DNA of 64,000 nucleotides, from positions 186,001-250,000 of IMG/VR virus record IMGVR_UViG_3300025121_000282; one strand, given 5' to 3'. Shown here in pieces: positions 2,811 through 28,921 of the stretch. A model generated the notes under the pieces. It had not been told where the DNA came from, did not search any database, and saw only the letters and a program-made list of their open reading frames with translations. Numbering within the stretch: position 1 is the first letter of the stretch; each line of letters opens with the position of its first letter. Both the position numbers and the translations under genes were made by a program.

Positions 2811-2926
2811 GTAATAATTCTACAATTTACCAAAGCACAGATTATACGCTCTCAGAGGATTGACGATGGGTGGCGAGGGGTGAAGGACCCCAGAAGAGAG
2901 AATCAATCAACTAACTGAGATGGAGA

Positions 2927-3409
2927 ATGAAAATGTCTGGTCGTCGCCCCCGAATCGTCGCTTCTTCCCTCGCCCTTCTCGCCCTTCTCGCCCCCGCGAA
3001 CGCTGCCCCTGAGGAGCAGGGGCAGGAGCCGGTCACGGATGGCCTCCCTGGACCCATCGTGACGCCCGAGCCCGAGCCGGTCCTGGAGCCCGTCTCGCCC
3101 CCCACGGCTGCTCTGCAGCAGAAGGCCCCGGCGCCCCTCTGTCTCTGCGGATGCCTCGTGCAGACCTCCTCGGTTCGTCGCCTCTTCCGCCAGGGCCACG
3201 ACGCCCGCCTCGTGGGCTTCGTCGCTCGTGGCAAGCTGGCCGATGGCTCCGAGCCGAGCCCCGAGCAGACCGCAGCGGCGAACCAGATCCGGAGTGCCAA
3301 GGCTTGGACCGCCGCCCGCCGTCTCCCGCCGGTCCTGGAGGCCGCGACCCAGGAGGAAATCTCGGCCACGGAGCAGGCGGGAGAGGCCACTGCTTCCAAC
3401 GTGGGCTGA
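2927..3409 (+). CDS. family A (CLCGC...RQGHDARLVG putative metal-binding protein), copy 1, signal-peptide-like N-terminus
   Basis: Clear paralogy with 18505..18975 and 26000..26506; promoter motif at 2860. Confidence 0.85.
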   Translation: MKMSGRRPRIVASSLALLALLAPANAAPEEQGQEPVTDGLPGPIVTPEPEPVLEPVSPPTAALQQKAPAPLCLCGCLVQTSSVRRLFRQGHDARLVGFVARGKLADGSEPSPEQTAAANQIRSAKAWTAARRLPPVLEAATQEEISATEQAGEATASNVG

Positions 3410-3439
3410 TTGACCTGTGTCCCCACCGGGTGAAGAATT

Positions 3440-3555
3440 GCAAGACCCGGCTGGAAGTCCTAACTGCAGCGGCCCCTCCCTGTTCATCCTCCCTGTTCAC
3501 AGTGAGGCCCAACATGGACCATCCAATGCTTCGGGGATTCTCAGTCGGGTCTTGT
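3440..3555 (+). ncRNA. candidate sRNA with tandem anti-SD-like CCUCCCUGUUCA seeds
   Basis: Between motifs at 3410 and 3566, no ORF; 14-bp closing stem 3440-3453/3542-3555 with two G-U pairs. Confidence 0.65.
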
Positions 3556-3636
3556 TGTATCTGGGTTGACCCGGTTTGTTTCCATGTGAAGAATTATAAG
3601 GAGGAACTATAAAATGGCCCCAGTTCACCCTGCGAT

Positions 3637-3915
3637 CCAGTACCTCAAAGACTTGAGGCTCTGAGTTGGACTTCACCCGTGCCTCGGTGTGGGTTGACCC
3701 CGACTACTGTCCGCCGAATGATGACAAGACCTTCCGGGTGGACCTCCCCAACAAAGACGTGTTTGTCATCGTTTACCTGCCCGGTGCTGTAGGCCTGAAC
3801 GGCTCGGAAGTGGGCGGGGAATACGGAGATTACGAGGAGTTCGAAAAATGAGCCTCCCCCACAACGACCCCCAAGTTCTCGGCTATTACCACCAGTACCT
3901 CAAAGACTTGAGGCT
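3637..3915 (+). repeat. 24-bp exact direct repeat CCAGTACCTCAAAGACTTGAGGCT (3637-3660, 3892-3915)
   Basis: Read directly; encodes QYLKDLRL in a 16-codon stub (3614-3664) and in ORF 3848. Confidence 0.9.
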
Positions 3916-4090
3916 GGTTCTGGGTGACCTTGAGTTTTCTCCCAACCTTAACGTGGAGAAAATCATCTGGAAGGGTGCGGAAATCGCAGCCTTGGCGGGG
4001 TACAGCGGGGCATCCAACGATGGTGGTGGTTGGAAACACGTTCTGGAGGGGACCCTGAACTTGTTGTACCGGAGATCAATCGTGGGTTGA
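3848..4090 (+). CDS. hypothetical protein
   Basis: Stop is the TGA of a TTGAC half-motif at 4087. Confidence 0.7.
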   Translation: MSLPHNDPQVLGYYHQYLKDLRLVLGDLEFSPNLNVEKIIWKGAEIAALAGYSGASNDGGGWKHVLEGTLNLLYRRSIVG

Positions 4091-4126
4091 CCACAATCCA
4101 CCAGATAACAAATAGGGGTTTTAGTC

Positions 4127-4381
4127 ATGATATCAGTCTCCGCTGATACAGACCCAGATTTCCTTGCGGCAGTAAACCAGATGGTCGCACAAAACATCGC
4201 CGGTCGGGGGGCGCCTGACCGGGTAAAAATAACCATTCAGAACACTAGCGTTTACTTTCAGGGTCCGGTGAGTTTCCTCGATAGTACCGACCTGGAGCGA
4301 CTTTGCGGATGGCCGGTCCGAGTGTGGTACCACGACCTCACTTCGTTTTTGGTTTGTTACCAGAAGCCAAACCGGGATTGA
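4127..4381 (+). CDS. hypothetical protein
   Basis: Stop inside TTGAC at 4378. Confidence 0.7.
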   Translation: MISVSADTDPDFLAAVNQMVAQNIAGRGAPDRVKITIQNTSVYFQGPVSFLDSTDLERLCGWPVRVWYHDLTSFLVCYQKPNRD

Positions 4382-4678: not shown

Positions 4679-4960
4679 ATGTGGCATCCCATTCAGTGCG
4701 GGCGGCCTCGCCATGAGGCTGACCACCCGTTCACGCTATTCGGTGAACTTGTCAAGTACGGAGACACACTGGAGTTCCTCCTACCTGACGGCCATGTCCA
4801 CCCCCCGGTCATGGTTCATGGGGGAAGTGAAAACATCATGGGCGGCACGACGGAGGTGTATGTCTACCTGACTCTGCACGGTCTGTCTGTCAGATATGGG
4901 TTTGGTGCTCTCGCCCAATGCATGGTGAGTGCACGTAAAGCCACCCCGACTCCCGGTTGA
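4679..4960 (+). CDS. hypothetical protein
   Basis: AGGAGG RBS; stop inside TTGAC at 4957. Confidence 0.75.
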   Translation: MWHPIQCGRPRHEADHPFTLFGELVKYGDTLEFLLPDGHVHPPVMVHGGSENIMGGTTEVYVYLTLHGLSVRYGFGALAQCMVSARKATPTPG

Positions 4961-5248: not shown

Positions 5249-5297
5249 GGCAACCCTGGATTGACCGGGACCGAGACAAGACGAAGAATCCCAGAGA

Positions 5298-5385
5298 GCG
5301 AGAGTGGCGAAAAACAGGAAGACGCCCTAGCTTCAGGTGCTAGGGGCTGCAAGGCACTCAGGTTCGAATCCTGACTCTCGTACCA
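5298..5385 (+). tRNA. trnL: tRNA-Leu (CAG)
   Basis: Acceptor GCGAGAG/CTCTCGT+ACCA, anticodon arm CTAGC-TTCAGGT-GCTAG, long variable arm, T arm TCAGG-TTCGAAT-CCTGA; own motif at 5261. Confidence 0.93.
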
Positions 5386-10319: not shown

Positions 10320-10868
10320 TTAAATGCTACTGTAAGCCCTTAACACTTCTGCAACGTCGTCATACACTTCTGGTTCAGTCGCAACAGTAGCGCAGCAATT
10401 CACCGACCTGACCACTCTGGGCTGGAAGATTTCTACCAGGGTCCTGGTCTGCTCGTTCACAGCGTCCCTCAAAGTCCTAAAAATTCCCACACCACCCTTG
10501 ATTTTGTAATCGGTCTGCTTGTCGTCCAACGCAAGCTTTGCGCCCGCCTTGGTTATAGCCTTGTCTATAATTTTCCAAATTGCAGTCCGAGTCAACTTAC
10601 CCCAATGAAGGATAGACTTGAAAAGTAGGGATTTGGCTTCCAACTTATTCTTGCGTCCGTATTCCAGAAGGCGAGTCTGTAGGCTGGCTTTGACTTTGTC
10701 TGGCATTTGACAATCTCGCACCAGAGCCTGAGCTTGCCCATAAGTCAAACCTGAAATTTGCTTATCTGAGGTAATTCTCAGGTTTGCGCATAGGATGAGC
10801 AGTAACTTATCACGGTTTGAGTGGGCAACTTCTATCATGGTTTTGAAAAGTTTGGCTACAGTGCTCAT
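10320..10868 (-). CDS. basic, AT-rich hypothetical protein (possible late/virion protein)
   Basis: AGGAG RBS; TGTATAAT upstream (10900-10907). Confidence 0.8.
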   Translation of the reverse strand: MSTVAKLFKTMIEVAHSNRDKLLLILCANLRITSDKQISGLTYGQAQALVRDCQMPDKVKASLQTRLLEYGRKNKLEAKSLLFKSILHWGKLTRTAIWKIIDKAITKAGAKLALDDKQTDYKIKGGVGIFRTLRDAVNEQTRTLVEIFQPRVVRSVNCCATVATEPEVYDDVAEVLRAYSSI

Positions 10869-17667: not shown

Positions 17668-18504
17668 ACCCGAATTCGCCCGTTGCGGTCCGCCTGTCAC
17701 CAGTACGTGGCATAGCTGCCCCCTCCCATCTGTACTCCCACGTGAATGCGGCTCGCACTCGCAACCGCCTATCAAACCCACACACCACTCAATTGCGCGC
17801 CCGCATCAAGTACCCACAATTTCGCAAACAGCATACACGAACACGGATGTACACGGAATCGTGTATGCTGTGCTTTCGTGTATGCCAGAACGGATGTACT
17901 GCATCACGCTCTCGCCAACACATGCAAGTGCTCACGTGAACGTACGGGCTGTCACATGTGGGCCCACACACGAGTGTGCTCAGTGTTCAAGAAAATTTGT
18001 CCACAATATCTCGTTCTGATTTCTGAAATTTGTCCGCACTGTTCCCACTCTCCCAAGACAACCACCCCAGCTTTGGAAGCCCCTCAGTTTAGAACTATTC
18101 ACCCCCTGACACCCCTCGAACCAAAGCTATTTACACGTCCACACCTAGAAACTTTCAACTTCTGGTGTGTTTATTTATACCTATGGTTCTAAAAAGCGGT
18201 CTATTATAACAAGGTGTCACCCTTTGGCCAAACCAGAGCCACAGGTTTGGGCCTGCCTTGGGTTTGGGGCTTGGGGGGGGGGAGTTGTTTTTCACCCAGT
18301 AGGGAGTGCTAGATAACCCGTATTTCGGGAGTCTCAAACCGTTGACTACCCATTGACGGAGCCCTGTAGGGGTGAAATAACTCAGAGACGGAGATTTTCT
18401 TTCCCGCCTCGAAGAGACTCCCCCCCCCCGACTAAGGATTGACGAGGCGGGATGGGGAGTGAAGAATCCCAGAGACAATCAACCGACTGAACAGGAGATT
18501 CCCA

Positions 18505-18975
18505 ATGACCACCAAGTCCACCAAGTCCACCACCAAGTCCCCCCGCGCTCCCAAGATCGTCGTCGAGAAGCTGGACGCCCTGGGCTTCCCGATTCCCGCC
18601 GCTGCGCAGGAGCCGGTCATCGTCCCGGTCGAAGAGACCAATCCGGGCGCGACCGGGGTCGCGCCCGTCGTCGTCGTCAAGGCGGTCCGAGTCGTCCCCG
18701 AGGCCCCGCTCTGCCTCTGCGGGTGCCTGACCCAGACCAGCCACCACACCCGGACCTTCCGCCAGGGCCACGACGCCCGGCTGGTGGGGATGTTCCGCAA
18801 GGCGCCCGAGGGCCTCTCGGAGGCGCAGGTCGCGGCGGCCACCCAGATCATCAACCGGAAGCTCCAGAGCGCCGCCGCGAAGCTCCCGGCCGCCTCCAAG
18901 CCCATCCTGGAGGCCGCTCCTGCAGAGCAGAACGAGACCACCAGCGACGAGGCCGCTGCTTCCAACGTGGGCTGA
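18505..18975 (+). CDS. family A (CLCGC...GHDAR) protein, copy 2
   Basis: Paralogy; motif at 18439; AGGAG RBS. Confidence 0.88.
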   Translation: MTTKSTKSTTKSPRAPKIVVEKLDALGFPIPAAAQEPVIVPVEETNPGATGVAPVVVVKAVRVVPEAPLCLCGCLTQTSHHTRTFRQGHDARLVGMFRKAPEGLSEAQVAAATQIINRKLQSAAAKLPAASKPILEAAPAEQNETTSDEAAASNVG

Positions 18976-18982
18976 TCGGCCT

Positions 18983-19007
18983 TTCGCCTCCCGGACGGAG
19001 CGGTCAA
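18983..19007 (-). promoter_or_regulatory. antisense promoter motif TTGAC-N15-GCGAA pointing into 18505..18975
   Basis: Exact motif on the - strand just after the stop codon. Confidence 0.65.
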
Positions 19008-19066
19008 TCTTTGGGTGTCCGAGCCCGGGATTGACCGCCCAAGGACCGAGGTGAATCATCCCGAGA

Positions 19067-19231
19067 TTGGCTGTTCAGAAATCGGTTCGAAACATTGAGG
19101 ATTGGCAACCACCCGGTACGTTCCGGGAAAGGGGTCAATCTTTAGGAGGTGGTTTGTCAGGACCACCAACCCAGCACATAGGCTGACACCTTTTGTGATT
19201 GGGTGCTTCGGACCGGTTTCTGAACAGCCAA
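19067..19231 (+). ncRNA. candidate structured ncRNA 1 (25-bp closing helix, multibranch core)
   Basis: 19067-19091 pairs with 19207-19231, its only non-Watson-Crick pairs being two G-U; own motif at 19031; no ORF. Confidence 0.7.
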
Positions 19232-19269
19232 ATGAGGATTGACCGCTCTGGTCTCCGAGGCGAAGAGTT

Positions 19270-19340
19270 ATGTGGGGGTACCAATCGGCCCTAGAGGCCG
19301 GGGTCCACTGATACGTAATTCAGTATTGGTACCCCCACAT
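19270..19340 (+). ncRNA. candidate ncRNA 2 (three-way junction)
   Basis: Perfect 16-bp stem 19270-19285/19325-19340 enclosing CGGCC/GGCCG and ACTGA/TCAGT hairpins; motif at 19239. Confidence 0.65.
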
Positions 19341-19378
19341 TGTCAATTGACGAGAGTCACCCTCAGGTGAAGTGTCCT

Positions 19379-19553
19379 GGAAGAGAGGACAATCCAAGCC
19401 CCCGAGCCGTGTGGCCCGCCCGACTCCGCGGTAAGGCCTGCCACCCGCTTTGGGACTCAAGGGGCCTCTCTTCCCTTTTCAACTACACCCTCATTGGTCC
19501 TTTTCAAGAGACTGGTGGGGGCGCAGTCGTATTTGGGGTTCGAAAAGGACCAA
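19379..19553 (+). ncRNA. candidate ncRNA 3 (two stem domains)
   Basis: 10-bp stem 19379-19388/19465-19474 and 12-bp stem 19494-19505/19542-19553; motif at 19347. Confidence 0.6.
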
Positions 19554-19609
19554 AACCTGGATTGACCGATTTTGTTTCCATGCGAAGAAAGACAAGGAGG
19601 AACTCAAAA

Positions 19610-19843
19610 ATGTCCAGATTCAAACCCTCGGTTTCGCAGCTGATGGAGGTCCAGCACCGGGTGGACACTCAGAATCCGTCGCAAGTGGCACTCTTCTGCC
19701 GGGTGATTGGTGCCTCGATGCTTGCCAATGCTGCTGCCTCGATTCCCTCCGTCTGGAGAGCGGCTCGGGCCCAGTTGGCCATTGAGGCCGCCACGCTCAA
19801 TGTGGTCTTGGGCATCGACCTCGAAGTGGTTTGGTGCGATTGA
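19610..19843 (+). CDS. hypothetical protein
   Basis: AAGGAGG RBS; stop inside TTGAC at 19840. Confidence 0.8.
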   Translation: MSRFKPSVSQLMEVQHRVDTQNPSQVALFCRVIGASMLANAAASIPSVWRAARAQLAIEAATLNVVLGIDLEVVWCD

Positions 19844-19900
19844 CTGATTTCGTTTCCATGTGAAGAACGACACACAATCGACAGGGAGGGGCTAAAAAAG

Positions 19901-20173
19901 ATGGCACGCTTCTACGTTCAGGCGAGTGAGTACGAGTTGATTGCGTCCCTGGACGTGGTTGTGGCCGACACCTACGAGGCCATCCAACACTTTAACCGGC
20001 ACTTCAAGGGACGGGTTGGCGGGTGGAAAGACGTGAAGAGTTCCACCCACATCGTGATCAACCTTGACAACCCCAAAGAGCACTGGTTGGGAACCGACTC
20101 CTTCAAGCGCATCTGCACCGGGTGGCGCGAAGGTCGAGAATACTGGTCGGGTCCACACTCAATCGAGTATTAA
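19901..20173 (+). CDS. hypothetical protein
   Basis: GGGAGG RBS; stop inside TTAAC at 20170. Confidence 0.8.
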   Translation: MARFYVQASEYELIASLDVVVADTYEAIQHFNRHFKGRVGGWKDVKSSTHIVINLDNPKEHWLGTDSFKRICTGWREGREYWSGPHSIEY

Positions 20174-20236
20174 CCGGTTCCATCTTCAGCTGAAAGAGAC
20201 TACGAGACACCGAACCAACTGAAAGGGGGATTCCAA

Positions 20237-20689
20237 ATGCTCAGCGAAGACCGACTCGAAGTTCTCGACCTCTACGGCTTCGGATGGAATCGCTTCTTTC
20301 AGACGGTCCACGAGCCGGACCCGGAAGTGAAGCGGTCCATGATCGGCGATGTGCTTCTCATGTGGGAGTTCGACAAGACAGGAGCCGAGTACCACTGGTA
20401 CGACCTGTTCACACGCCTCCGCCGAGACGAGCATGCGATCATCCTGGAGCAGCTGTTGGTCTTCATCGACCAGGGGTTCGTCCTCGGACCGTTCGCAGAC
20501 GACACCATCACCATCAACCCGGAAAAGCAGGAAGAACTGATGCTTTTCGTGGGTATGTGGCCGGAGGGTTTCGAGGCACCCGAGGGTGTGGAAGTTCTTC
20601 GCCTGACGGAAGAGGCCAAGGACATTCTCGAAACAGAGGGCGGAGAAGAGTACCTCATCGAGCAGGCGGTCAAAGCACTCAAGGATTGA
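20237..20689 (+). CDS. acidic hypothetical protein
   Basis: Stop inside TTGAC at 20686. Confidence 0.8.
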   Translation: MLSEDRLEVLDLYGFGWNRFFQTVHEPDPEVKRSMIGDVLLMWEFDKTGAEYHWYDLFTRLRRDEHAIILEQLLVFIDQGFVLGPFADDTITINPEKQEELMLFVGMWPEGFEAPEGVEVLRLTEEAKDILETEGGEEYLIEQAVKALKD

Positions 20690-20759
20690 CCGGCCTCTCC
20701 TTCGGGTGAAGGAACTAAGAGAGCACTTTCGCTCTCCTTTTCCAGCCCAGGAGGTCATA

Positions 20760-21065
20760 ATGTCCCGCATCGACGCCGAATTCAAGTCCGTTGTCGCTTT
20801 CGCCAGTTACAAGCTCGACAACGACGACCCCACCTTCACGGGTGCCGATTTGCAAACCCTCAACCGGGTGACGCTGACATCGGTCCCGAACATCAAGCTC
20901 CAATTGCTCGAACTTGGCCTGACCCAGGCCATTCCCGAAAAGGCCTCCGTGGTCCGAGGGTTCACCGCGAACTCGCACGACCGGTGGGCCGGCAACCCCT
21001 GCGCGGGTGGGTCGGGTGGGTCGTCGATCCAGAAGTTCGCAGGGAATGCGGCCGGCTGGAATTGA
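20760..21065 (+). CDS. hypothetical protein
   Basis: AGGAGG RBS; stop inside TTGAC at 21062. Confidence 0.8.
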   Translation: MSRIDAEFKSVVAFASYKLDNDDPTFTGADLQTLNRVTLTSVPNIKLQLLELGLTQAIPEKASVVRGFTANSHDRWAGNPCAGGSGGSSIQKFAGNAAGWN

Positions 21066-21117
21066 CCTGAAGTCCTGTGGGGCGAAAGTCCACACACCAA
21101 ACCAGGGAGTTTTCAGT

Positions 21118-21387
21118 ATGTCGCGAGGCAACTCACAAGTCAATCGAAACTACGAATGCGCCACAAAGATGGCCGAGTGTGCTGATTTCGTGGTTGAGCA
21201 CTTGGGCTCACACGCACACTTTCAGGTGCGATGGGGGCAATTCTGGGCGACGGTCCGCCTCGACAGAAATGGGGATGTCTCGTGCGGGAGTTTCAATCGA
21301 AACTTTTCGCCTTGGGGCTCATCCGCCTCTGTTTTTTCCGAATTGCTGAGACAGTGGAAGTCCGAGGGTGAACCCAAGGCTGATTGA
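21118..21387 (+). CDS. hypothetical protein
   Basis: GGGAG RBS; stop inside TTGAC at 21384. Confidence 0.75.
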   Translation: MSRGNSQVNRNYECATKMAECADFVVEHLGSHAHFQVRWGQFWATVRLDRNGDVSCGSFNRNFSPWGSSASVFSELLRQWKSEGEPKAD

Positions 21388-21447
21388 CCCGTTTCCATTT
21401 CGGACGAAAAGACTACGAGACACCAGCCAACAAAGGAGTAGTTTCCA

Positions 21448-21726
21448 ATGTCCCCACCCTTTCTGATCGATTTTCAGGCCATGCAAGACCACCTGAACTC
21501 AAGGGAGATGGTACTCGCTGCCTGTTCCATCAATCGGGGTCAGCACGCAGGACAGCGGCTACGGCTCGTGGCGCGTTTCCTGGTGGAAGACCCCGGTGAT
21601 AAGGACACGATTTTCTACTATGTCACCCGCACGTTCCAGGGTGATAAGGTGTACGAGGATGGGCCAAGCCCACGTCTGGCTCTCTCGGTGTCGCTGTTCA
21701 ACAGCATCTCCCTGGGCGAAGGTTGA
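21448..21726 (+). CDS. hypothetical protein
   Basis: AAGGAG RBS; stop inside TTGAC at 21723. Confidence 0.8.
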   Translation: MSPPFLIDFQAMQDHLNSREMVLAACSINRGQHAGQRLRLVARFLVEDPGDKDTIFYYVTRTFQGDKVYEDGPSPRLALSVSLFNSISLGEG

Positions 21727-21777
21727 CCCGCCTCGTTTCCATGTGAAGACCAGCACACAATCAAGGAGGAAACAGTA

Positions 21778-22035
21778 ATGACTCTGGCCAACGACCCCCG
21801 CCGGTGGGGCGGGATTTGCAAGTGGGATGGAACTTCGGCTCCCACGGTGACCGTCCAACCCCGGCTCCTGGATCTCCAAGGGTACGACTCGAACGGTCAG
21901 TACTTCGGGCGCGGTCTCCCCCTCTACTGCGTCACAGACGAAGAGGGGGACATGAACTTCTTCGTTCGTGCGGAGGGCATGGACCACGCCCGAGAGTTGG
22001 TTCTGGAGCGGGTTCCCACCTGTCAGTTCGCCTAA
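21778..22035 (+). CDS. hypothetical protein (LDxxGYDxxGxYFGxG)
   Basis: AAGGAGG RBS; motif at 21723. Confidence 0.8.
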   Translation: MTLANDPRRWGGICKWDGTSAPTVTVQPRLLDLQGYDSNGQYFGRGLPLYCVTDEEGDMNFFVRAEGMDHARELVLERVPTCQFA

Positions 22036-22098
22036 GTGGGAATTGACTGAGGTCCGTTTCCACCTGAATTGTGACACACTGAGAAATGGAGACTGAAA

Positions 22099-22323
22099 GT
22101 GGCCAACGTTCCCTACAAGTTTCGTGGTCTTCCCTGCAACATCACGACCGACGACAAGCTCTGGTGCATCGTCGGTCGCTTCGTCAATGAACGGGGTTGC
22201 GGTGGGGGCGCCTTGGAGTGGTGCTACGATGAGCAGGACGCCTCGGCTGTTCTGGCTCAGATGGTTCAGGACAGCCAGTTTCGAAACCTGCAAGCCATCA
22301 CGTATAAGCAGTTCTGCGCTTAA
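22099..22323 (+). CDS. hypothetical protein
   Basis: GGAG RBS; stop inside TTAAC at 22320. Confidence 0.75.
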   Translation: MANVPYKFRGLPCNITTDDKLWCIVGRFVNERGCGGGALEWCYDEQDASAVLAQMVQDSQFRNLQAITYKQFCA

Positions 22324-22373
22324 CCCACGCCGTTTCCATGTGAACAGTCACGCACTGGAAAAGGAGACCGAAA

Positions 22374-22514
22374 ATGGTAAAGAATCTCATCATCGGTCTC
22401 CTGCTCGTTGCCTTCGTGGCACGGGCAAACCCAGAAAAGGTGGCTCATCTGAGCAAGATGGCCACGACTGGAGTCACCTACCTGGAGAAACAGGTCGGGT
22501 TCAAATTCTGGTGA
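22374..22514 (+). CDS. 46-aa membrane-anchored/secreted peptide
   Basis: AAGGAG RBS; MVKNLIIGLLLVAFVARA hydrophobic N-terminus. Confidence 0.65.
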   Translation: MVKNLIIGLLLVAFVARANPEKVAHLSKMATTGVTYLEKQVGFKFW

Positions 22515-22562
22515 ATTGACCGCACCACAATTCGGACGAAGAGTGTTGTAGGAGACACCCCC

Positions 22563-22868
22563 ATGTACAAGAGTTTGGCAGAGTTTCTAGCCTCAACGAA
22601 TTTGCTGGAGAGGTTGACCAACATCGACAGGGCCCTGAATGTAAACGGGGCCCTGTGCAACCACCATGACGGTGTGGTCTTCAAAATCAACTTCGGCCCC
22701 TATACGGCGAGTTGCATGTGGCTGGATACCGTGTCGGACAACACCTGGAATGTCCAACTCTCCTACCTGGATTCAGACCACAAATACCACCCGTTCGGTG
22801 GCAGCGTTTCAACCTCTGAGTTCAAGATCGTAAAGGGTGTAGCCGAGATCTGCGGACTCGGCAATTGA
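22563..22868 (+). CDS. hypothetical protein
   Basis: AGGAG RBS; stop inside TTGAC at 22865. Confidence 0.8.
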   Translation: MYKSLAEFLASTNLLERLTNIDRALNVNGALCNHHDGVVFKINFGPYTASCMWLDTVSDNTWNVQLSYLDSDHKYHPFGGSVSTSEFKIVKGVAEICGLGN

Positions 22869-23245
22869 CGGGGTCTTCTCCGGGTGAAGAGTCCCCGAGG
22901 CGCTTTTGCCTCCCTTGTCCTCTGGGGGTTTTAACCATGCCTTCTTCCGATCTCTCCTTTTCCTTTTCCGGCCGTCCCTACCGCGCCCGCCTTCTCTCCG
23001 AGCCCGGCAAGGGTGACGCGCTGGTCTTCGGTCTCAGCCTCAACCCGAAACTGGACAAGGTCTGGGTTCTGGTGCAACGTGACGGCGCGTGGGTGCGCCC
23101 CACGGGTGAAAAGCCCTCGGCTCTGGGGCGGGCCGCAGTCGCAGCGATCGGTTGATCGGCGTTTCCGATTGACGGGGTCTTCTCCGGGTGAAGAGTCCCC
23201 GAGGCGCTTTTGCCTCCCTTGTCCTCTGGGGGTTTTAACCATGCC
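22864..23245 (+). repeat. 78-bp exact direct repeat (22864-22941, 23168-23245) comprising promoter, leader and ATG
   Basis: Read directly base for base. Confidence 0.95.
22937..23155 (+). CDS. hypothetical protein (MPSSDLSF)
   Basis: ATG inside repeat copy 1. Confidence 0.7.
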   Translation: MPSSDLSFSFSGRPYRARLLSEPGKGDALVFGLSLNPKLDKVWVLVQRDGAWVRPTGEKPSALGRAAVAAIG

Positions 23246-23540
23246 CGCCGCTGCCGCCCTTGCCCTCGACACGTTCCAGGCCAACCACGCGAATGACGAC
23301 CTTTGGGACGTCATGACGTTTGCTGATATGGTGGAAAACTGGCACCTTTCGACCCCCGAAGAAGAGTGCTTCAAAGCGGCTCTGGAGTTGGAGGGGCTCG
23401 GCCTCCTCACCGTCAGTACCGGATTTCTGTGCTACTCGGTCGAACTGACGGGCCTTGGGCGAGAGGCCTCCCAGATCTTCCACCAGCGGTTTTTGGACCG
23501 CGTGAAGGCCCAGAACCCGGACTTCGATGGCGTATGGTAA
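23241..23540 (+). CDS. hypothetical protein (MPAAAALA)
   Basis: ATG inside repeat copy 2. Confidence 0.75.
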   Translation: MPAAAALALDTFQANHANDDLWDVMTFADMVENWHLSTPEEECFKAALELEGLGLLTVSTGFLCYSVELTGLGREASQIFHQRFLDRVKAQNPDFDGVW

Positions 23541-23592
23541 GGGATTGACTGAAATCTGTTTCCATGTGAATTGTGACAAGGAGGAACTCAAA

Positions 23593-23820
23593 ATGGAAAC
23601 AGAAATCCTGACCCAGTGGTTCAACGAGGAAAGCGGCAATCACTGGATCGTGGTGGAAGACGCCATTGGGAAGTTTCTTCACAAGGGAAAACGGGTGGCA
23701 CTGCTGGCGGTCAGCGGTGATGTGGACAACACCTTCGTACTGAAGTGGGTTGTCGACCCCTGCTGGACGACGGAAGAGGAAGAATCGGCACTGTCAGTGC
23801 TTGGAGTTGCAGCCCGCTGA
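23593..23820 (+). CDS. hypothetical protein
   Basis: GAGGA RBS; motif at 23545. Confidence 0.75.
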   Translation: METEILTQWFNEESGNHWIVVEDAIGKFLHKGKRVALLAVSGDVDNTFVLKWVVDPCWTTEEEESALSVLGVAAR

Positions 23821-23865
23821 ATCGATTCAGCGGGATTGACCGCAGTTTTTTCGTGTGAATTACAA

Positions 23866-24050
23866 TGTACCGGGGCGACCTCCGAAGGGCCACTTAGCTC
23901 TTAAACATGTGCCTACGCCCCAAAGTGCTATGCGGTAGGGTGCATGCAATAGTCGTCAATGGTGTCTGGCGTAAGTGTGCTGCGGGGTCGGGTCAATGTT
24001 CGACCGTAAGACCGTCTGAAGCACACAGACACCGTTCCTTTTAAAGCTGG
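23866..24050 (+). ncRNA. candidate structured ncRNA 4
   Basis: Motif at 23836 followed by no ORF; nested stems 23961-67/24027-33, 23975-81/24020-26, 23986-90/24001-05 and 23906-16/23935-46. Confidence 0.55.
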
Positions 24051-24051
24051 A

Positions 24052-24090
24052 CCCCCCCCCTGCAATAATGGCTGCGGGCGGGGATAGATG
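24052..24090. repeat. C9 tract plus hairpin element copy 3
   Basis: GCAATAATGGCTGCGGGCGGGATAGATGT at 24062-24090. Confidence 0.85.
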
Positions 24091-24318
24091 TGTCAAACGT
24101 GTGGACACCTGCTACGCCTGTCAACGCGTCCACGCTGCATCCGCACAACCCACTCAGACGTACCCCCACGGGAGACATTCGAGCCGCACAATCCATTGTA
24201 ACCCGTTTCCACATAATAGTAAGTTGTGGTGGGTGGCAGGTTGTCCGAGGCATTTGAAAACTCACTGTTGAATCTTCCACCTGAGATTGACCCGTTTCCA
24301 TCTCGGGTGAAAAACAAC

Positions 24319-24714
24319 ATGGAAACAACATGGACCAATGAAGACGCAGCCGAAGCAGGACGAGCCTACCAAGGAGCCAACGACCCGGATTGGCAGGCAC
24401 CTGACCTGGACTGGCGGTACGAACCTGCTTTTCCAGTTGAAAAACTCATCCCGCTGATGCCGAGTGGGTTCAACGGCTGGAATTCGTGGCTGCTGGACGA
24501 GCGGCAGTGGGACGAGTCTGGAGGTACCAGTCGATGGGGCGACGAATTCACCGAGTGGTGGAAGCAACAGTCCGAGGATGAGCCCGTGGTCCTCGTGGAA
24601 TCGCACGATGGGTCCAAAATCCTTGGGATCTGGGATGGGTGGCCCCGGTCTGCGGTTTCCATCACCTCAAGGTTGCCGACCCTACCTGCCTTTGTGGGTC
24701 GGGCCAGACAATGA
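24319..24714 (+). CDS. possible degenerate ParB/Srx-like domain protein; probably leaderless
   Basis: EPVVLVE...IWDGWPR resembles the ParB DGxHR motif with H replaced by P; ATG 8 nt after GTGAA. Confidence 0.6.
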   Translation: METTWTNEDAAEAGRAYQGANDPDWQAPDLDWRYEPAFPVEKLIPLMPSGFNGWNSWLLDERQWDESGGTSRWGDEFTEWWKQQSEDEPVVLVESHDGSKILGIWDGWPRSAVSITSRLPTLPAFVGRARQ

Positions 24715-24806
24715 TTCAGCCATAACTCCCTGGTGACAAGTTGCAATTGACCGAACTTTCGTTCAGGCGAAAGTTCTGGAGAGACAACCAACCACGAAGA
24801 TTCCAA

Positions 24807-25025
24807 ATGACCCTCCCCATCACGATTTTCGTTGTCACGACCGCCTCGTCCATTGACGAAAACACACCGAACCCGAAGGTGATGGTGGGACACCTCTCCG
24901 AAGGCGAAATCTGGAACCAGTTCACCGAGCTCCTGGGTGGGTCTGACTGCGAACTCATCCAGGAGAGCGAAACCCGCTGGACCGGCGTCGTGGGAGACCG
25001 GACGGTCTTCGCCTTCCACGCCTGA
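24807..25025 (+). CDS. hypothetical protein
   Basis: Motif at 24747. Confidence 0.7.
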   Translation: MTLPITIFVVTTASSIDENTPNPKVMVGHLSEGEIWNQFTELLGGSDCELIQESETRWTGVVGDRTVFAFHA

Positions 25026-25085
25026 ACGATTGACGGGCTTTGTTTCTGTCTGACGAACACCACACCAACAAGGGAGACTTCGAAA

Positions 25086-25304
25086 ATGACTCGCGAAACC
25101 GTCACCAAGTGCATTGCCTTCATTTACATCTGCCTTTGCACCATTGGCCTCGGCGCCATGGCGGGCCTGCAGGAGCGGCAGTTCAGCGGGGCATGGTGGG
25201 TGCTCAGTCTCCTGATGGCCGCGGTCGTGGCGGTCATGGGCCTCATGGCCACCGTCTGCGAGCGCAAGCACCTGGGTTGGCGAATCTGGGTCGAAGAGTG
25301 CTGA
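25086..25304 (+). CDS. two-TM membrane protein
   Basis: GGGAG RBS; two hydrophobic segments. Confidence 0.75.
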   Translation: MTRETVTKCIAFIYICLCTIGLGAMAGLQERQFSGAWWVLSLLMAAVVAVMGLMATVCERKHLGWRIWVEEC

Positions 25305-25364
25305 TTGACGGAGCCTCCTGAGGGGCGAAGAGTCCCAGACCAACAACCAAGAGGAGACCGCACG

Positions 25365-25709
25365 ATGCCATTCCCCACCCCCCAGATCGAAGCTGCCACT
25401 CCCACCCCCTGCTCCGCCTTTCGGGCGTGGGCTGTCTACGCCGACTTCGACGGCAATGCGCCTGACACCAAGGACCTCGTCCTTTGCGCCTCCGAACCGC
25501 TGGCGCAAGCGGCGGCAGAGTTCCTCGCGTGGGCTGCCGACGAGCAGCAGGCGAACTGTTACAATGGCGCTGACTGCGACCCTGATGCCGATGGTGTTGC
25601 CGTCCCATCGGTCGACGAAGCGAATCGCGCGAGGAATTTCGTGGTCCGCGAGACCGTGGCCTCTCGGGTCTGCACGACCTGGGACGAGGTGTTGGCCGAC
25701 CTTCGCTAA
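25365..25709 (+). CDS. hypothetical protein
   Basis: GAGGAG RBS; motif at 25305. Confidence 0.75.
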   Translation: MPFPTPQIEAATPTPCSAFRAWAVYADFDGNAPDTKDLVLCASEPLAQAAAEFLAWAADEQQANCYNGADCDPDADGVAVPSVDEANRARNFVVRETVASRVCTTWDEVLADLR

Positions 25710-25716
25710 CCTGACC

Positions 25717-25741
25717 TTCGTCCTCGACTGAGAGTCGTCAA
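25717..25741 (-). promoter_or_regulatory. antisense promoter motif TTGAC-N15-ACGAA pointing into 25365..25709
   Basis: Exact motif on the - strand just after the stop codon. Confidence 0.65.
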
Positions 25742-25999
25742 GCTGTGCCCAGTCTGCCGAGAGGTGGCCTGGGCACAGCCGTACCTGAGTTCTGAGAGAT
25801 TCGTCCTCACAGGCATCCGGCTCTTCGGGCTGATTGGCCGATTGACGGAGGGTCGCAGCGGGTGAAAAAGGATAAGAGGACGAGATAGTTTCGTTTCGGT
25901 CCTCCTGCCCCGGTCCCCCGACTAAGGATTGACGGACCCGGGGCCGAGACGAAGAATCCCAGAGACAGCGAATCAACCCAAGACGAAGGAGATCATCCC

Positions 26000-26506
26000 A
26001 TGGCCACCAAGTCCACCAAGAGCACCACCAAGTCCCCCCGCGCCACCCGCAAGCAGGCCGAGGTCCTCGACGCCCTCGGTTTCCCGGTCCCCGCCATCAT
26101 GGAGGCCGCTCCCGAGCCCGTCGTGGCGCCCGAGCCCGAAATCCCGGTGGTCGTGGCCGTCAAGGCCGAAAAGGCGGTCCGAGTCGTCCCCGAGGCCCCG
26201 CTCTGCCTCTGCGGCTGCCTCGTGCAGACGAGCAGCCACCTGCGGACCTTCCGCCAGGGCCATGACGCCCGGCTGGTGGGCTTCCTGGCCGCCAACGAGC
26301 GGGCGGTCGCGAAGCAGAAGGAGGCCCCTCACAACCTCTCGGAGGCGCAGATCACCGCCGCCTGCCAGATCCGGAACCGCAAGGCGGAGGCCGCCGCCGC
26401 GAAGCTCCCTTCGACCTCGTCGAAGCCCGTGCTGGAGGCCGCTCCTGCGGAGCAGAACGAAGCCGAGCAGAGCACGGACGAGCAGGACGCCGCGAACGCC
26501 GGCTGA
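26000..26506 (+). CDS. family A (CLCGC...GHDAR) protein, copy 3
   Basis: Paralogy; motif at 25929; AAGGAG RBS. Confidence 0.88.
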   Translation: MATKSTKSTTKSPRATRKQAEVLDALGFPVPAIMEAAPEPVVAPEPEIPVVVAVKAEKAVRVVPEAPLCLCGCLVQTSSHLRTFRQGHDARLVGFLAANERAVAKQKEAPHNLSEAQITAACQIRNRKAEAAAAKLPSTSSKPVLEAAPAEQNEAEQSTDEQDAANAG

Positions 26507-26513
26507 TCGGGCC

Positions 26514-26538
26514 TTCGTCTGACCGACCCGCCCGTCAA
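26514..26538 (-). promoter_or_regulatory. antisense promoter motif TTGAC-N15-ACGAA pointing into 26000..26506
   Basis: Exact motif on the - strand just after the stop codon. Confidence 0.65.
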
Positions 26539-26629
26539 GCTTTCCGAGCCGATTGACCGCAGCCTCTGAGGGGCGAAGGAATCCCGAGGGCAGTTTCGCC
26601 CCCCCCCCACCAACAGAGGACCATTTACA

Positions 26630-26962
26630 ATGATCAGCGCTTTTCGGGACATGGTTGCTGAATTCGAACGGACCAAGGCTGCTTTCGAAGCCGCACAACG
26701 GAAGTTGGAGCAGGGACGGCGGCAGTGTGCCCATCTGTGGGGACCCACCCAATACGATCCCATCAGGACCAAGGGATACGAAAAGCAGGACCTCATGGGT
26801 CATTTCACGGTGAGCCAGGACGGTCACGTCAACGCTCCCACGGTGTACATCCCTCCGACCGAAACCCCGCAGTGGGTCCGCACCTGCGAACACTGTGGAC
26901 TGACCGAAACCACCCGGCAGACAACAGAGCAGAAGAGCTACACGCCGAAGTTCGGGCAGTAG
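26630..26962 (+). CDS. hypothetical protein (coiled coil plus CxH...CxxC Zn site)
   Basis: GAGG RBS; motif at 26553. Confidence 0.75.
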   Translation: MISAFRDMVAEFERTKAAFEAAQRKLEQGRRQCAHLWGPTQYDPIRTKGYEKQDLMGHFTVSQDGHVNAPTVYIPPTETPQWVRTCEHCGLTETTRQTTEQKSYTPKFGQ

Positions 26963-26999
26963 GGGGATTGACCGAATCGCACGATGGGTGAAAGAACAT

Positions 27000-27260
27000 A
27001 TGAGCACACCACAAGAAATCCAGGCCCAGAAAACCCTCATTCAGCGGCTCGATGCGGCCGGAATCCTGGACAGTGAGAAGGACTGCGACTTCAAGCTTCG
27101 GGACGAGTTGTTCTTCCGGGTGGGCAACACGATCTTCGGGTATGAGGACCCCACAATCACGGAGGTTCCCTCAACCACGATGGGTGACGATGTCAGCACC
27201 TACGAGGTGAACTACGTCAGAATGCTCGCCGTGTGGGTTGACCCGGTCAAGATCCTGTAG
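27000..27260 (+). CDS. hypothetical protein, probably leaderless
   Basis: ATG 8 nt after GTGAA of the motif at 26968, no SD. Confidence 0.7.
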   Translation: MSTPQEIQAQKTLIQRLDAAGILDSEKDCDFKLRDELFFRVGNTIFGYEDPTITEVPSTTMGDDVSTYEVNYVRMLAVWVDPVKIL

Positions 27261-27278
27261 AAAAATGGGTCAAGTAAA

Positions 27279-27578
27279 ATGAAATGGTGGCTCTCATTCT
27301 GCGATGCAACCCTACCAAGGGGCTCTCAATTCTTGGGTGCTTGCATCGTGGAAGGTGAAAGCATGATCGAGGCGGTAAAGAGTGCACATCGCCTCGGATG
27401 CAACCCTGGTGGAGAAGTCCAGGGCTGTCCTGTTCAAGAAGATCTGGTCATTGCCGATAGGTGGCTTTCACGCTTGTTATCGCGTGAAGAGTGTACACAG
27501 GTGGATGAAGAAGTGTACAAGGCCAAGTTGAAATTGACCGAATCGCACGATCGGTTGAACAAAGGTGCGGGACACTAA
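27279..27578 (+). CDS. hypothetical protein (MKWWLSFCD...GCNPGGEV)
   Basis: 99 aa ORF with typical codon usage. Confidence 0.7.
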   Translation: MKWWLSFCDATLPRGSQFLGACIVEGESMIEAVKSAHRLGCNPGGEVQGCPVQEDLVIADRWLSRLLSREECTQVDEEVYKAKLKLTESHDRLNKGAGH

Positions 27579-28128
27579 CTCAGTTAGCAAAGAATGCCTA
27601 CATTGCAAGGTTTCGTTTGTCCCACCGTACAGAAATAGACAAAAGAAATTTTGTTGTGTAGAGCACTCTCGTCTGTGGCAGAGCCAAACCCTGACTAACC
27701 AGAACACCGTCTCACGCGACGGGAAGTGTCGAAAGTGTGCTATCACCATAGACACCAACTTTCCGGGCAAAAATAGAGGTGGGCGTAGTAGACTATGTGC
27801 CAAGTGTTTCAGCAACTACACCAGTGAGCGTTATCTTTCCAGAAAACTGGCTTTAATTGAGTTTTTGGGCGGAAAATGTCATGACTATGGGCAGCAGTAC
27901 CATTATGCTGCCATGCAGTTTCATCACACGGACCCCAACAGCAAAGAGTTTGACTGGAGCCGTTTAAGACGACAGTCTCTCGCCACTGTGCTAAATGAAA
28001 TTAGCAAGTGTGCTTTGCTCTGCAATAATTGCCATGCAATAAGGCACTGTCAATCCCAGATAAGTGACGAGTCTCTAAGAATGAAAAATAACTTCCTCGC
28101 TGACTTAAGATCGGCGCACGCCTTTTAA
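27565..28128 (+). CDS. HNH homing endonuclease-like protein
   Basis: GGKC...QFHHTDPNSKEF...KCALLCNNCHAIRH, N-terminal Zn/DNA-binding Cys motifs; AT-richer than neighbours. Confidence 0.85.
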   Translation: MRDTNSVSKECLHCKVSFVPPYRNRQKKFCCVEHSRLWQSQTLTNQNTVSRDGKCRKCAITIDTNFPGKNRGGRSRLCAKCFSNYTSERYLSRKLALIEFLGGKCHDYGQQYHYAAMQFHHTDPNSKEFDWSRLRRQSLATVLNEISKCALLCNNCHAIRHCQSQISDESLRMKNNFLADLRSAHAF

Positions 28129-28316: not shown

Positions 28317-28541
28317 ATGACAACCCCGGCAGGGCCCATGGCGACAGAGTACGTGGCACACGCTGAAACTTGTCCGCGATGTGAGACTGTAGACCGTGGA
28401 GTTGTGTCTGATTCCCGATTAAGACCAGGGTCCAGATGTCCAGTAGGTAAAATACTGGTCAAAGCAGCAGTGAGGGAAGATGTCCGTTTAGGCAGGTGCC
28501 ATCCCAACGGGCAAAGCAAGAGTTTTGTGTCCCCCAAGTAG
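28317..28541 (+). CDS. small Cys-containing hypothetical protein
   Basis: CPRC...CPVG; motif at 28253. Confidence 0.45.
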   Translation: MTTPAGPMATEYVAHAETCPRCETVDRGVVSDSRLRPGSRCPVGKILVKAAVREDVRLGRCHPNGQSKSFVSPK

Positions 28542-28921
28542 TTCTACTATCCGAAGTCGTGGTCAATCACAGACCATAATCGTGCGATTCCAGAAGGTTG
28601 TAATTGACGAATCGCATGATGGGGTGAAAAATAGTGGGAGTCCGAGAAATTACAACAGGGCAAAGGTGGATAATTGACAGAGCACGGGGAAGGTGGAAAT
28701 ACCCCACGGAAGGAAACGGGGGAGTCCGAAATATACCCCATTTCCCGAAAGGTCGGGGGCCGTCAAATGTATATATCGATATATATTTCCAGAGGTATAT
28801 ATCATCTTGCGCGTGCTCCAATGTACCTGGACGAATATTCGGATACAAACGTTTGATAACTTGTTAGTGCTGTTTTGGTCGCACCTACGTTGTTTCGTTG
28901 TTCCATTAAAAACAGGAGTGT

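What the first reader, a model, noticed from the sequence alone, without database searches (positions are those of the whole stretch)
18983..26538. Antisense promoters placed right behind stop codons
I found only three exact - strand copies of the motif, all N15: 19007-18983, 25741-25717 and 26538-26514. Each has its YGAA 8 nt beyond the stop of a sense gene (18975, 25709, 26506), so by the inferred offset the antisense RNA would start at the stop codon. Two of the three target family A genes. Each lies back to back with the next sense promoter or a strong hairpin (11-bp stem at 25742-25779). Inference: built-in cis-antisense or collision control of the lead genes.
Basis: partly seen in the sequence, partly recalled or inferred. 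Interest (0 to 1): 0.68.

Follow-up and report, generated by a model that had tools for sequence, protein, structure and literature searches.

The report
Reverse promoter copies at gene ends
In a 315-kb uncultivated groundwater phage where almost every early gene has its own promoter, a few genes also carry a backward-facing copy of that promoter motif just after their stop codon; a related phage keeps these copies, so they are probably weak antisense promoters, but no RNA data exist to show it.

Summary
The window holds exactly three minus-strand copies of TTGAC-N16-YGAA (18983-19007, 25717-25741, 26514-26538). Each starts 8 nt after a plus-strand stop codon, and two follow paralogous "family A" genes.

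The count alone is weak evidence: 0.36 copies are expected, and two of the three share descent. Outside the nine anchor bases the sites look like background sequence. Two further results argue for function.

1. Of the ten minus-strand N16 sites with at most one anchor mismatch in window 1-31 kb, five start 1-8 nt after a stop codon (binomial p about 1e-7). The two added sites are 24715-24739 and 28542-28566. None of 18 N15/N17 control sites does this.
2. A divergent relative phage (proteins 64-81% identical) keeps an exact reversed motif at all three orthologous places that its contigs cover. The anchors are intact while the spacers have diverged or changed length by one base.

I read these sites as selected, probably weak, convergent promoters. 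They would start antisense RNA at the stop codon, as lambda pO/OOP does opposite cII, and/or interfere with read-through transcription. No transcript evidence exists: no RNA runs hold this phage and no antisense terminators were found. This is a new member of a known kind, of moderate interest.

The parts
18983..19007 (-). Reverse promoter-like site 1: TTGACC-N15-CGAA, read on the - strand. It starts 8 nt after the stop of family A gene 18505-18975. Its -35 lies back to back with the sense promoter at 19031, forming a 9-bp inverted repeat, 19001-19009 with 19029-19037.
   Evidence: identical in strain loci L018, L023, L025 and L030
25717..25741 (-). Reverse promoter-like site 2: TTGACG-N15-CGAA. 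It starts 8 nt after the stop of gene 25365-25709 and abuts the hairpin at 25742-25779.
   Evidence: the orthologous place in the relative phage keeps TTGAC-N15-CGAA (L141:3348-3371)
26514..26538 (-). Reverse promoter-like site 3: TTGACG-N15-CGAA. It starts 8 nt after the stop of family A gene 26000-26506, and 14 nt separate it from the -35 of the sense promoter at 26553.
   Evidence: the orthologue L024:1135-1159 keeps an exact N16 motif 8 nt after its stop
24715..24739 (-). Added candidate with one mismatch: TTGTC-N16-TGAA followed by TCAT. It starts 1 nt after the stop of gene 24319-24714 and ends 7 nt before the sense promoter at 24747.
   Evidence: the orthologous place in the relative holds an exact TTGAC-N17-TGAA (L141:2744-2769)
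28542..28566 (-). Added candidate with one mismatch: gaTTGACC-N15-AGAA. It starts 1 nt after the stop of gene 28317-28541, upstream of the sense promoter at 28604.
   Evidence: no relative sequence available
18505..18975 (+). Family A gene (156 aa, with a CxCGC...FRQGHDARLVG motif). It is the target of site 1 and is driven by sense promoters at 18353 (N15) and 18439.
   Evidence: GC3 0.92
26000..26506 (+). Family A gene (168 aa). It is the target of site 3 and is driven by sense promoters at 25842 and 25929.
25365..25709 (+). Gene 2 (114 aa, no family assigned). It is the target of site 2, with its promoter at 25305.
24319..24714 (+). Gene of 131 aa. It is the target of candidate 24715-24739. 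Its ATG lies exactly 8 nt after the YGAA of promoter 24287, which suggests a leaderless mRNA.
28317..28541 (+). Gene of 74 aa, the target of candidate 28542-28566.
25742..25779 (.). Hairpin with an 11-bp outer stem and no U-tract, lying between site 2 and the family A cassette. The relative has a different-sequence 10-bp hairpin at the same place (L024:370-401).
19031..19055 (+). Sense promoter back to back with site 1.
26553..26577 (+). Sense promoter back to back with site 3.
24747..24771 (+). Sense promoter back to back with candidate 24715-24739.

Best explanation
The sites are reverse-oriented copies of the phage's early promoter motif (a -35-like TTGAC, 16 bp, then YGAA), kept by selection directly behind the stop codons of a few early genes in the GC-rich block at 18-28.6 kb.

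The most likely mechanism is that the same RNA polymerase holoenzyme that fires the roughly 70 sense promoters also binds these sites. It would then start a weak leftward transcript at, or within a few bases of, the stop codon. That RNA is fully complementary to the 3' end of the upstream mRNA, as lambda OOP RNA from pO is to cII. The polymerases making it also run head-on into sense polymerases. Either effect would lower expression of the upstream gene and/or limit read-through into the next promoter-gene module.

Shown: motif identity, placement at stop codons, conservation in a relative, and the start-site offset of the sense class.

Inferred: that the sites fire at all, their strength, and what the transcript does.
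For: 1. The sense motif behaves as a promoter. The genome has 66 + strand against 7 - strand N16 copies. 56 of the + copies lie in a 90-kb co-directional block, 22-50 nt upstream of start codons that have ribosome-binding sites. A tRNA-Leu starts 13 nt after YGAA. Two genes have their ATG exactly 8 nt after YGAA.
2. The three - strand sites carry all nine anchor bases at the dominant N16 spacing, and they keep the purine-rich positions 19-21 of the sense class.
3. Placement is non-random. Five of the ten - strand N16 sites with at most one mismatch start 1-8 nt after a called stop. None of 18 N15/N17 control sites does. Binomial p = 1.5e-7, or 5e-6 with the paralogues merged; Fisher p = 0.0026.
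4. Conservation. The relative phage (family A protein 64% identical, neighbouring proteins 79-81%) has an exact reversed motif at all three orthologous places its contigs cover: L024:1135-1159 (N16, 8 nt after the stop), L141:3348-3371 (N15) and L141:2744-2769 (N17). For site 3 against L024 the anchors match 9/9, while the other flank positions match 9/23 (hypergeometric p = 0.0017).
5. The inverted repeat and hairpins next to the sites are not conserved between site 1, site 3 and L024. The motif is conserved.
6. A high-scoring - strand promoter at genome 79216 shows that the motif is used on both strands.
Against: - No RNA evidence of any kind. All 12 public runs that hold the sequence are DNA.
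- Outside the anchors the sites score like background: -9.9, -11.7 and -2.0. Background is -12.2 +/- 6.3 and the sense median is +9.0. The downstream 'gaa...CA' part is absent in all three, so they may be weak or inactive.
- There is no RBS-led gene or convincing intrinsic terminator on the - strand. The one weak hit is at 26338-26321, and terminator-like sites are fewer than in shuffles.
- Sites 1 and 3 share descent.
- Two family A paralogues (2933-3409; genome 139878-140483) and the family A gene on L026 lack the site.
- Only one relative lineage was found, so the comparative sample is small.
- My list of gene ends was partly hand-built.
Confidence: 0.55

Rival explanations
1. The sites act as a polymerase-binding decoy or roadblock without making a functional RNA. 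Holoenzyme parked at the reversed site, or abortively cycling there, blocks or dislodges read-through polymerases at the end of the gene. The site then works as an insulator or terminator substitute in a region with almost no intrinsic terminators.
For: - The region has fewer terminator-like sites than shuffled sequence, 8 against 14.5.
- It carries a promoter for nearly every gene, often overlapping the previous stop.
- The sites keep only the anchor bases and lack the start-region features, which fits binding better than efficient firing.
- They sit exactly at gene ends.
Against: - Only about 5 of 45 early genes have such a site, so it is not a general insulation system.
- In the classical 'sitting duck' interference known from coliphage 186, the elongating polymerase removes the bound one, not the reverse (established knowledge).
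Confidence: 0.18
2. The sites have no function. They are chance matches, multiplied by the duplication of the family A cassette and by recombination among the repeated promoter modules.
For: - Sites 1 and 3 are homologous.
- With paralogy removed, the bare count is only marginal, P = 0.05.
- Non-anchor positions look like background.
- The region recombines at its repeats. One strain lacks a 304-bp module, and a hybrid family A gene exists.
- Paralogue 2933-3409 does without the site.
Against: - Placement 1-8 nt after stops for 5 of 10 sites, against 0 of 18 spacing controls.
- An unrelated gene (25365-25709) carries the motif at the same 8-nt offset.
- All three orthologous places covered in a relative phage retain exact anchors, although the spacers diverged (6/16 identical) or gained or lost one base.
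Confidence: 0.15
3. The selected feature is a + strand or double-strand element other than a promoter. One option is a binding site for a dimeric regulator on the inverted -35 pair (GGTCAATC...GATTGACC). Another is a 3'-UTR RNA motif or hairpin of the upstream mRNA.
For: - Site 1 forms a perfect 9-bp inverted repeat with the next -35, and a 13-bp stem in read-through RNA.
- The block GTCAAGCTTTC is conserved beyond the 5-base anchor in site 3 and L024.
- Small hairpins occur in the spacers.
Against: - The inverted repeat is weak in site 3. It is absent in site 2 and in L024, where the next promoter is 56-100 nt away.
- Folds of sites 1 and 3 are no better than shuffles, z = -1.15 and +0.18.
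- An unrelated element would not be expected to reproduce both promoter anchors at the promoter's own 15-17 bp spacing in five places and in the relative.
Confidence: 0.1

Closest known systems
Lambda pO promoter and OOP antisense RNA opposite cII
   Same: In lambda, a promoter beyond the 3' end of a phage early gene points back into it. Its RNA overlaps the C-terminal coding region: OOP is made leftward from pO and overlaps cII by 52 nt (PMC5869508). By the inferred offset, the RNA here would also begin at the stop codon and be complementary to the 3' end of the gene.
   Different: OOP is a demonstrated, short RNA that ends at the tO hairpin terminator and acts through RNase III. Here no RNA, terminator or nuclease dependence is shown. 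Here the motif also recurs behind several unrelated genes of one early block, and it copies the phage's own mass-produced promoter type.
Transcriptional interference between convergent phage promoters (coliphage 186 pR/pL; see PMC6593788, found)
   Same: Face-to-face promoters on one stretch of DNA, so collision, occlusion or 'sitting duck' effects are possible.
   Different: In 186 the two promoters are close together and form a developmental switch between lysis and lysogeny. Here the sense and reversed sites are 400-670 bp apart, across a whole small gene. They are of the same promoter class, and no strength asymmetry has been measured.
Sigma-70-type bipartite promoters (TTGACA, 17 bp, TATAAT)
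   Same: The -35-like TTGAC(C) is shared. A 17-bp gap leads to a hexamer AAnnAY in which A25 could stand for A-11 and Y29 for T-7. The generic scan accepts several sense copies.
   Different: The conserved second block is YGAA rather than TATAAT, and no polymerase or sigma factor has been assigned. The genome has no Sigma70_r2 match and only one sub-threshold Sigma70_r4-like match.

Membership tests
This phage's early promoter class (gaTTGACc-N15-YGAAgaa...CA) | The anchor blocks TTGAC and YGAA, separated by 16 bp | tested here: met
   Exact in the three reported sites. One mismatch in each of 24715-24739 and 28542-28566.
This phage's early promoter class (gaTTGACc-N15-YGAAgaa...CA) | Secondary positions: GA before TTGAC, C at position 6, purines at 19-21, GAA at 26-28, CA at 32-33 | tested here: not met
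   Non-anchor log-odds scores are -9.9, -11.7 and -2.0, against a sense median of +9.0 and background of -12.2. The downstream part is at background level in all three. Purines at 19-21 are kept. The upstream GA is kept only in site 1 and in 28566.
This phage's early promoter class (gaTTGACc-N15-YGAAgaa...CA) | Drives a downstream gene: an RBS and start codon, or an RNA gene, within about 10-50 nt | tested here: not met
   No RBS-led - strand gene was found. The long - strand ORFs are mirror frames of GC3-rich + genes (GC1 0.66-0.85 against sense GC3 up to 0.93) and have no Pfam match.
This phage's early promoter class (gaTTGACc-N15-YGAAgaa...CA) | Transcription actually starts about 8 nt after YGAA | not testable with these tools
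   No RNA run holds the phage. The offset is inferred for the sense class only.
OOP-like cis-antisense small RNA | A promoter downstream of the target gene's stop, pointing into the gene | tested here: met
   Shown by sequence geometry only.
OOP-like cis-antisense small RNA | A defined terminator that gives a short discrete RNA | tested here: inconclusive
   Only one weak terminator-like site lies downstream of a reversed site, at 26338-26321, about 170-185 nt from site 3. The other sites have none. The phage or its host may not use canonical terminators.
OOP-like cis-antisense small RNA | The RNA is detected and lowers target expression, for example through RNase III | not testable with these tools
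   No RNA data. The host is unknown.
Intrinsic (Rho-independent) terminator at the gene end | A GC-rich hairpin followed by a U-tract on the sense strand | tested here: not met
   Folds of sites 1 and 3 are no better than shuffles. The strong hairpin at 25742-25779 has no U-tract and lies beyond the motif, not in it.
Convergent-promoter transcriptional interference | Two face-to-face promoters active at the same time on one template | tested here: inconclusive
   The geometry is met: sense promoters lie 400-670 bp upstream of each reversed site. Activity is unknown.

The most novel reading that the evidence does not exclude
Reversed copies of the phage's own promoter, placed at stop codons, act as a built-in punctuation system: 'promoter as terminator or insulator'. 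Convergent initiation or parked polymerase would replace intrinsic terminators, so that selected promoter-gene modules in a terminator-poor, one-promoter-per-gene early region are expressed independently of their upstream neighbours.
Probability: 0.15. Interest if true: 0.7.

Novelty: new member of a known kind. Interest (0 to 1): 0.45.

Why it matters
If the sites fire, this huge uncultivated phage tunes individual early genes with built-in convergent promoters that start antisense RNA exactly at the stop codon. That would be a compact, repeated version of the lambda OOP-cII arrangement, found from sequence alone. It would give a concrete example of how a promoter-per-gene early region with almost no terminators controls read-through. 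It would also mark the unknown family A proteins and three other small genes as products whose dose matters to the phage. If the sites do not fire, their conservation still points to a polymerase-binding element at gene ends that is worth testing.

Tried and rejected
- Close relatives by DNA or protein in the 'phages' collection and in IMG/VR: none found. Using the three-paralogue alignment as query found only distant carriers of the CxCGC...GHDAR domain, not syntenic.
- Promoter-pattern scans of viral contigs gave only single chance hits. A scan for the stop-plus-reversed-motif pattern gave 109 chance hits, none of them a relative.
- The metagenome scan returned the same genome, near-identical strains (99.6-99.98%) and one 96% variant covering only window 2551-4270. 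None shows a change in the sites, so there is no power.
- Read laying on 20600-26599 in four DNA runs: the sites are unchanged, again with no power.
- Gene 2 has no divergent full-length homologue by word search. A truncated orthologue turned up only through synteny.
- Real genes on the - strand under the sites were rejected by codon-position GC and Pfam.
- RNA hairpin or terminator readings of sites 1 and 3 were rejected: z = -1.15 and +0.18.
- Rfam has no match in the window.
- Family A function stays open: no Pfam or PDB match, only the unknown-function families phrog_5395 and phrog_5390, and the ESM Atlas gives only hypothetical proteins.
- The N17 - strand copy at 4730-4755 lies inside gene 4680-4960 and is taken as chance.
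Full report
**Context.** The window is bases 186001-250000 of a single 314,886-bp contig. The genome search lists the contig as a virus record. All 12 public runs that hold the stretch are DNA runs: 11 groundwater metagenomes and one soil metagenome. The contig carries a GroEL-like gene, and baseplate-like genes on the - strand. It has no close relative in the phage or IMG/VR collections.

**The sense motif.** TTGAC-N16-YGAA occurs 40 times in the window, against 1.4 expected. N15 adds 4 copies and N17 adds 13.

- Genome-wide there are 66 + strand and 7 - strand N16 copies. 56 of the + copies lie in a co-directional block at genome 127-217 kb.
- A weight matrix of those 56 gives gaTTGACc, a variable spacer ending in purines, YGAA, a weak 'gaa', then C32 A33.
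- The copies sit 22-50 nt before start codons that have ribosome-binding sites. Many overlap or abut the previous stop codon, with stop-to-promoter distances of -4, 0 or +4.
- Three observations place the transcription start about 8 nt after YGAA. The first is the conserved CA at positions 32-33. The second is that two genes have their ATG exactly 8 nt after YGAA (24319 and 27000). The third is that tRNA-Leu 5298-5385 begins 13 nt after the YGAA of the promoter at 5261-5285.
- A population SNP at 25326 turns CGAA into TGAA, which stays within the motif's degeneracy.

I accept the motif as the early promoter class. The polymerase or sigma factor is not identified. The genome has no Sigma70_r2 match and one sub-threshold Sigma70_r4-like match at genome 19005-19151.

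**The observation.** Exactly three N16 copies lie on the - strand of the window: 18983-19007, 25717-25741 and 26514-26538.

- The + ORFs 18505-18975, 25305/25365-25709 and 26000-26506 end 8 nt before each site.
- The first and third ORFs are paralogues (family A). A third member lies at 2933-3409 and a weak fourth at genome 139878-140483.
- Sense promoters follow at 19031 and 26553. The hairpin 25742-25779 follows site 2.

**Is it more than chance?** By count alone, only marginally.

- Word frequencies on the - strand predict 0.36 N16 pairs in window 1-31 kb, giving P(>=3) = 0.006.
- The cassettes 18400-19075 and 25890-26600 are homologous from promoter to 3' flank. Sites 1 and 3 therefore count as one event, and P(>=2) = 0.05.
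- Outside the nine anchor bases the three sites score -2.0, -11.7 and -9.9 (sites 1, 2 and 3) on the sense matrix. Random DNA scores -12.2 +/- 6.3, and the leave-one-out median for sense copies is +9.0. Their downstream parts are at background level.
- Sense promoters that clearly drive genes also show CGAAgg or CGAAag (26553, 21062, 24747). The sites therefore look like weak promoters, not impossible ones.

**Two further tests change the picture.**

*Placement.* I listed every - strand N16 site with at most one anchor mismatch in window 1-31 kb. There are ten.

- Five start 1-8 nt after a called + stop. Three are the exact sites, at +8. The other two are 24715-24739 (TTGTC...TGAA) and 28542-28566 (TTGAC...AGAA), both at +1.
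- All five lie just upstream of the next sense promoter (or, at site 2, of a hairpin and then the promoter), with 7 to 100 nt to its -35 block.
- Only 1.45% of positions lie 1-10 nt after a called stop. That gives P = 1.5e-7, or 5e-6 with the paralogues merged.
- As an internal control, none of the 18 - strand N15/N17 sites with at most one mismatch lies that close to a stop. Fisher p = 0.0026.
- Caveat: the gene ends come from my promoter/RBS-guided calls. I cross-checked them only loosely, by eye, against the collection's own calls for L030.

*Conservation.* The word-based protein search found family A variants, and their contigs could be fetched.

- Most of those contigs are the same phage at about 99.8% identity and say nothing.
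- Logan contigs L024 and L141-L144 come from a diverged relative. Its family A protein is 64% identical. The orthologue of 24319-24714 is 81% identical, and the truncated gene 2 orthologue is 79% identical. The relative has the same sense promoter motif at high density.
- At each of the three orthologous places these contigs cover, the relative has an exact reversed motif:
  - After family A: L024:1135-1159, N16, again 8 nt after the stop.
  - After the gene 2 orthologue: L141:3348-3371, N15, 3 nt after the stop.
  - At the end of the 24319-24714 orthologue: L141:2744-2769, N17. Here the -35 block is perfect, whereas the window copy has one mismatch.
- For site 3 against L024 the nine anchors are identical. 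Only 6 of 16 spacer bases and 3 of 7 linker bases agree (hypergeometric p = 0.0017). Against the more similar site 1 flank, p = 0.029.
- By contrast, the spacers of the two sense promoters upstream of family A are 13-14 of 16 identical between the phages. The 3' flank is therefore the fastest-evolving part of the cassette, yet it keeps the two blocks and a spacing inside the 15-17 range that sense promoters use.
- About 5.3 kb of relative sequence holds three exact reversed N15-17 sites, all at gene 3' ends. About 0.2 would be expected, scaled.

**What is not conserved.**

- The 9-bp inverted repeat that site 1 forms with the next -35 (19001-19009 with 19029-19037) gives a 13-bp stem. It has only a weak counterpart at site 3, and none at site 2 or in L024.
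- Folds of sites 1 and 3 are no better than shuffles.
- The selected feature is therefore the bipartite motif itself, not a hairpin or palindrome. An unrelated element would not be expected to mimic both promoter blocks at promoter spacing in five places and again in a relative.

**Mechanism.** The simplest reading is that the polymerase that uses the sense promoters also recognises these sites in the opposite direction.

- With the sense offset, the leftward start falls on the stop codon for the +8 sites. The - strand there reads CGAA, seven bases, then TCA, so A32 or A35 is the likely start. For the +1 sites the start falls a few codons inside the gene.
- The product would be complementary to the 3' end of the upstream mRNA. 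This is the geometry of lambda OOP RNA, which is made leftward from pO and overlaps cII by 52 nt (PMC5869508).
- Head-on encounters with sense polymerases, as in convergent-promoter interference (literature found), are an equally possible or additional effect.
- The reversed sites belong to the same promoter class as their targets. I therefore expect steady damping or insulation rather than a temporal switch. This is inference.

**What argues for caution.**

- There is no RNA evidence.
- There is no consistent - strand terminator.
- The non-anchor scores are weak.
- Family A members at 2933-3409 and genome 139878-140483, and the family A gene on L026 (nearest A_2927), lack the site.
- Only one relative lineage is available.
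- The - strand ORFs under the sites (536, 355 and 225 aa) are mirror frames of GC3-rich genes, not genes in their own right.

**Verdict.** The antisense-promoter reading is the best supported but unproven, at about 0.55. A binding-only roadblock, a functionless by-product and a non-promoter element remain as rivals. This is a new member of a known kind: phage cis-antisense or convergent promoters.

Noticed in passing
window 2249-30385 (genome 127-217 kb): The sense promoter array is extremely dense. The 90-kb block holds 74 N15-17 copies, about 54 of them in window 2-30 kb, roughly one per 300-500-bp gene. Many stop codons are embedded in or abut the next TTGAC: TGA inside TTGAC, or ctgaTTGAC.
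   Followed up: partly
window 5261-5385: tRNA-Leu(CAG) at 5298-5385 has its own copy of the promoter at 5261-5285. The tRNA begins 13 nt after YGAA, which limits where transcription can start.
   Followed up: partly
window 24287-24321 and 26968-27002 (also genome 127672-127706): The ATG lies exactly 8 nt after YGAA with no ribosome-binding site. This suggests leaderless mRNAs that start at the A of the ATG.
   Followed up: no
window 22864-23167: The promoters at 22865 and 23169 are identical. One public run (X9) has contigs that skip 304 bp between them, with 78 bases shared at the joint. Strains therefore gain or lose a module by recombination at repeated promoters.
   Followed up: partly
L023:2817-3317 (JGI 3300009031); also L025: A hybrid family A gene has a 5' part like 26000-26506 and a 3' part plus flank like 18505-19060, followed by the genes downstream of 19031. 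This is either recombination between the paralogues (a duplication junction) or an assembly chimera.
   Followed up: no
window 25742-25779 vs L024:370-401: A strong hairpin lies just upstream of the family A cassette in both phages. The stem sequences differ (GCTGTGCCCAG/CTGGGCACAGC against GTGCCTAGTC/GACTAGGCAC), so the structure is conserved but not the sequence. It has no U-tract. It may be a terminator or an RNA-end structure.
   Followed up: partly
window 19031-19600: Four sense promoters (19031, 19239, 19347, 19562) lie in 600 bp where the collection's gene calls show no gene. GGTCAATCTTT from site 1 recurs at 19134-19144. These may be small RNAs or very small ORFs.
   Followed up: no
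window 18000-28000: A GC-rich block (56-59% GC) contrasts with 42-47% in the structural region. Family A genes have GC3 of 0.92-0.93. All five reversed sites lie in this block.
   Followed up: partly
genome 19005-19151 (outside the window; locus L145): A sub-threshold Sigma70_r4-like match (23.3 bits, E = 1.6e-5) lies in a 236-aa open frame. The genome has no Sigma70_r2 match.
   Followed up: no
window 27565-28128: An HNH endonuclease gene (phrog_2255, E = 9e-23) lies among the small early genes.
   Followed up: no
window 26597-26606 and 18270-18282: Homopolymer runs (poly-C, poly-G) in 5' leader or intergenic DNA differ in length between strain contigs: L016 has two fewer C, and L018 has one more G.
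   Followed up: no
window 24752-24774: Within the sense promoter at 24747, GAACTTTCG and CGAAAGTTC form a perfect 9-bp inverted repeat that spans the spacer and the CGAA block. The relative phage keeps GAACTTTCG in its promoter spacer.
   Followed up: no
window 10320-10868: This is the only - strand gene (182 aa) called inside the otherwise co-directional early block. It has no Pfam match and no exact promoter motif upstream.
   Followed up: no
whole genome / gene 2 protein record: The gene 2 protein is on record on 21 contigs, the longest 341,069 bp. A longer assembly of this phage than the 314,886-bp contig therefore exists.
   Followed up: no
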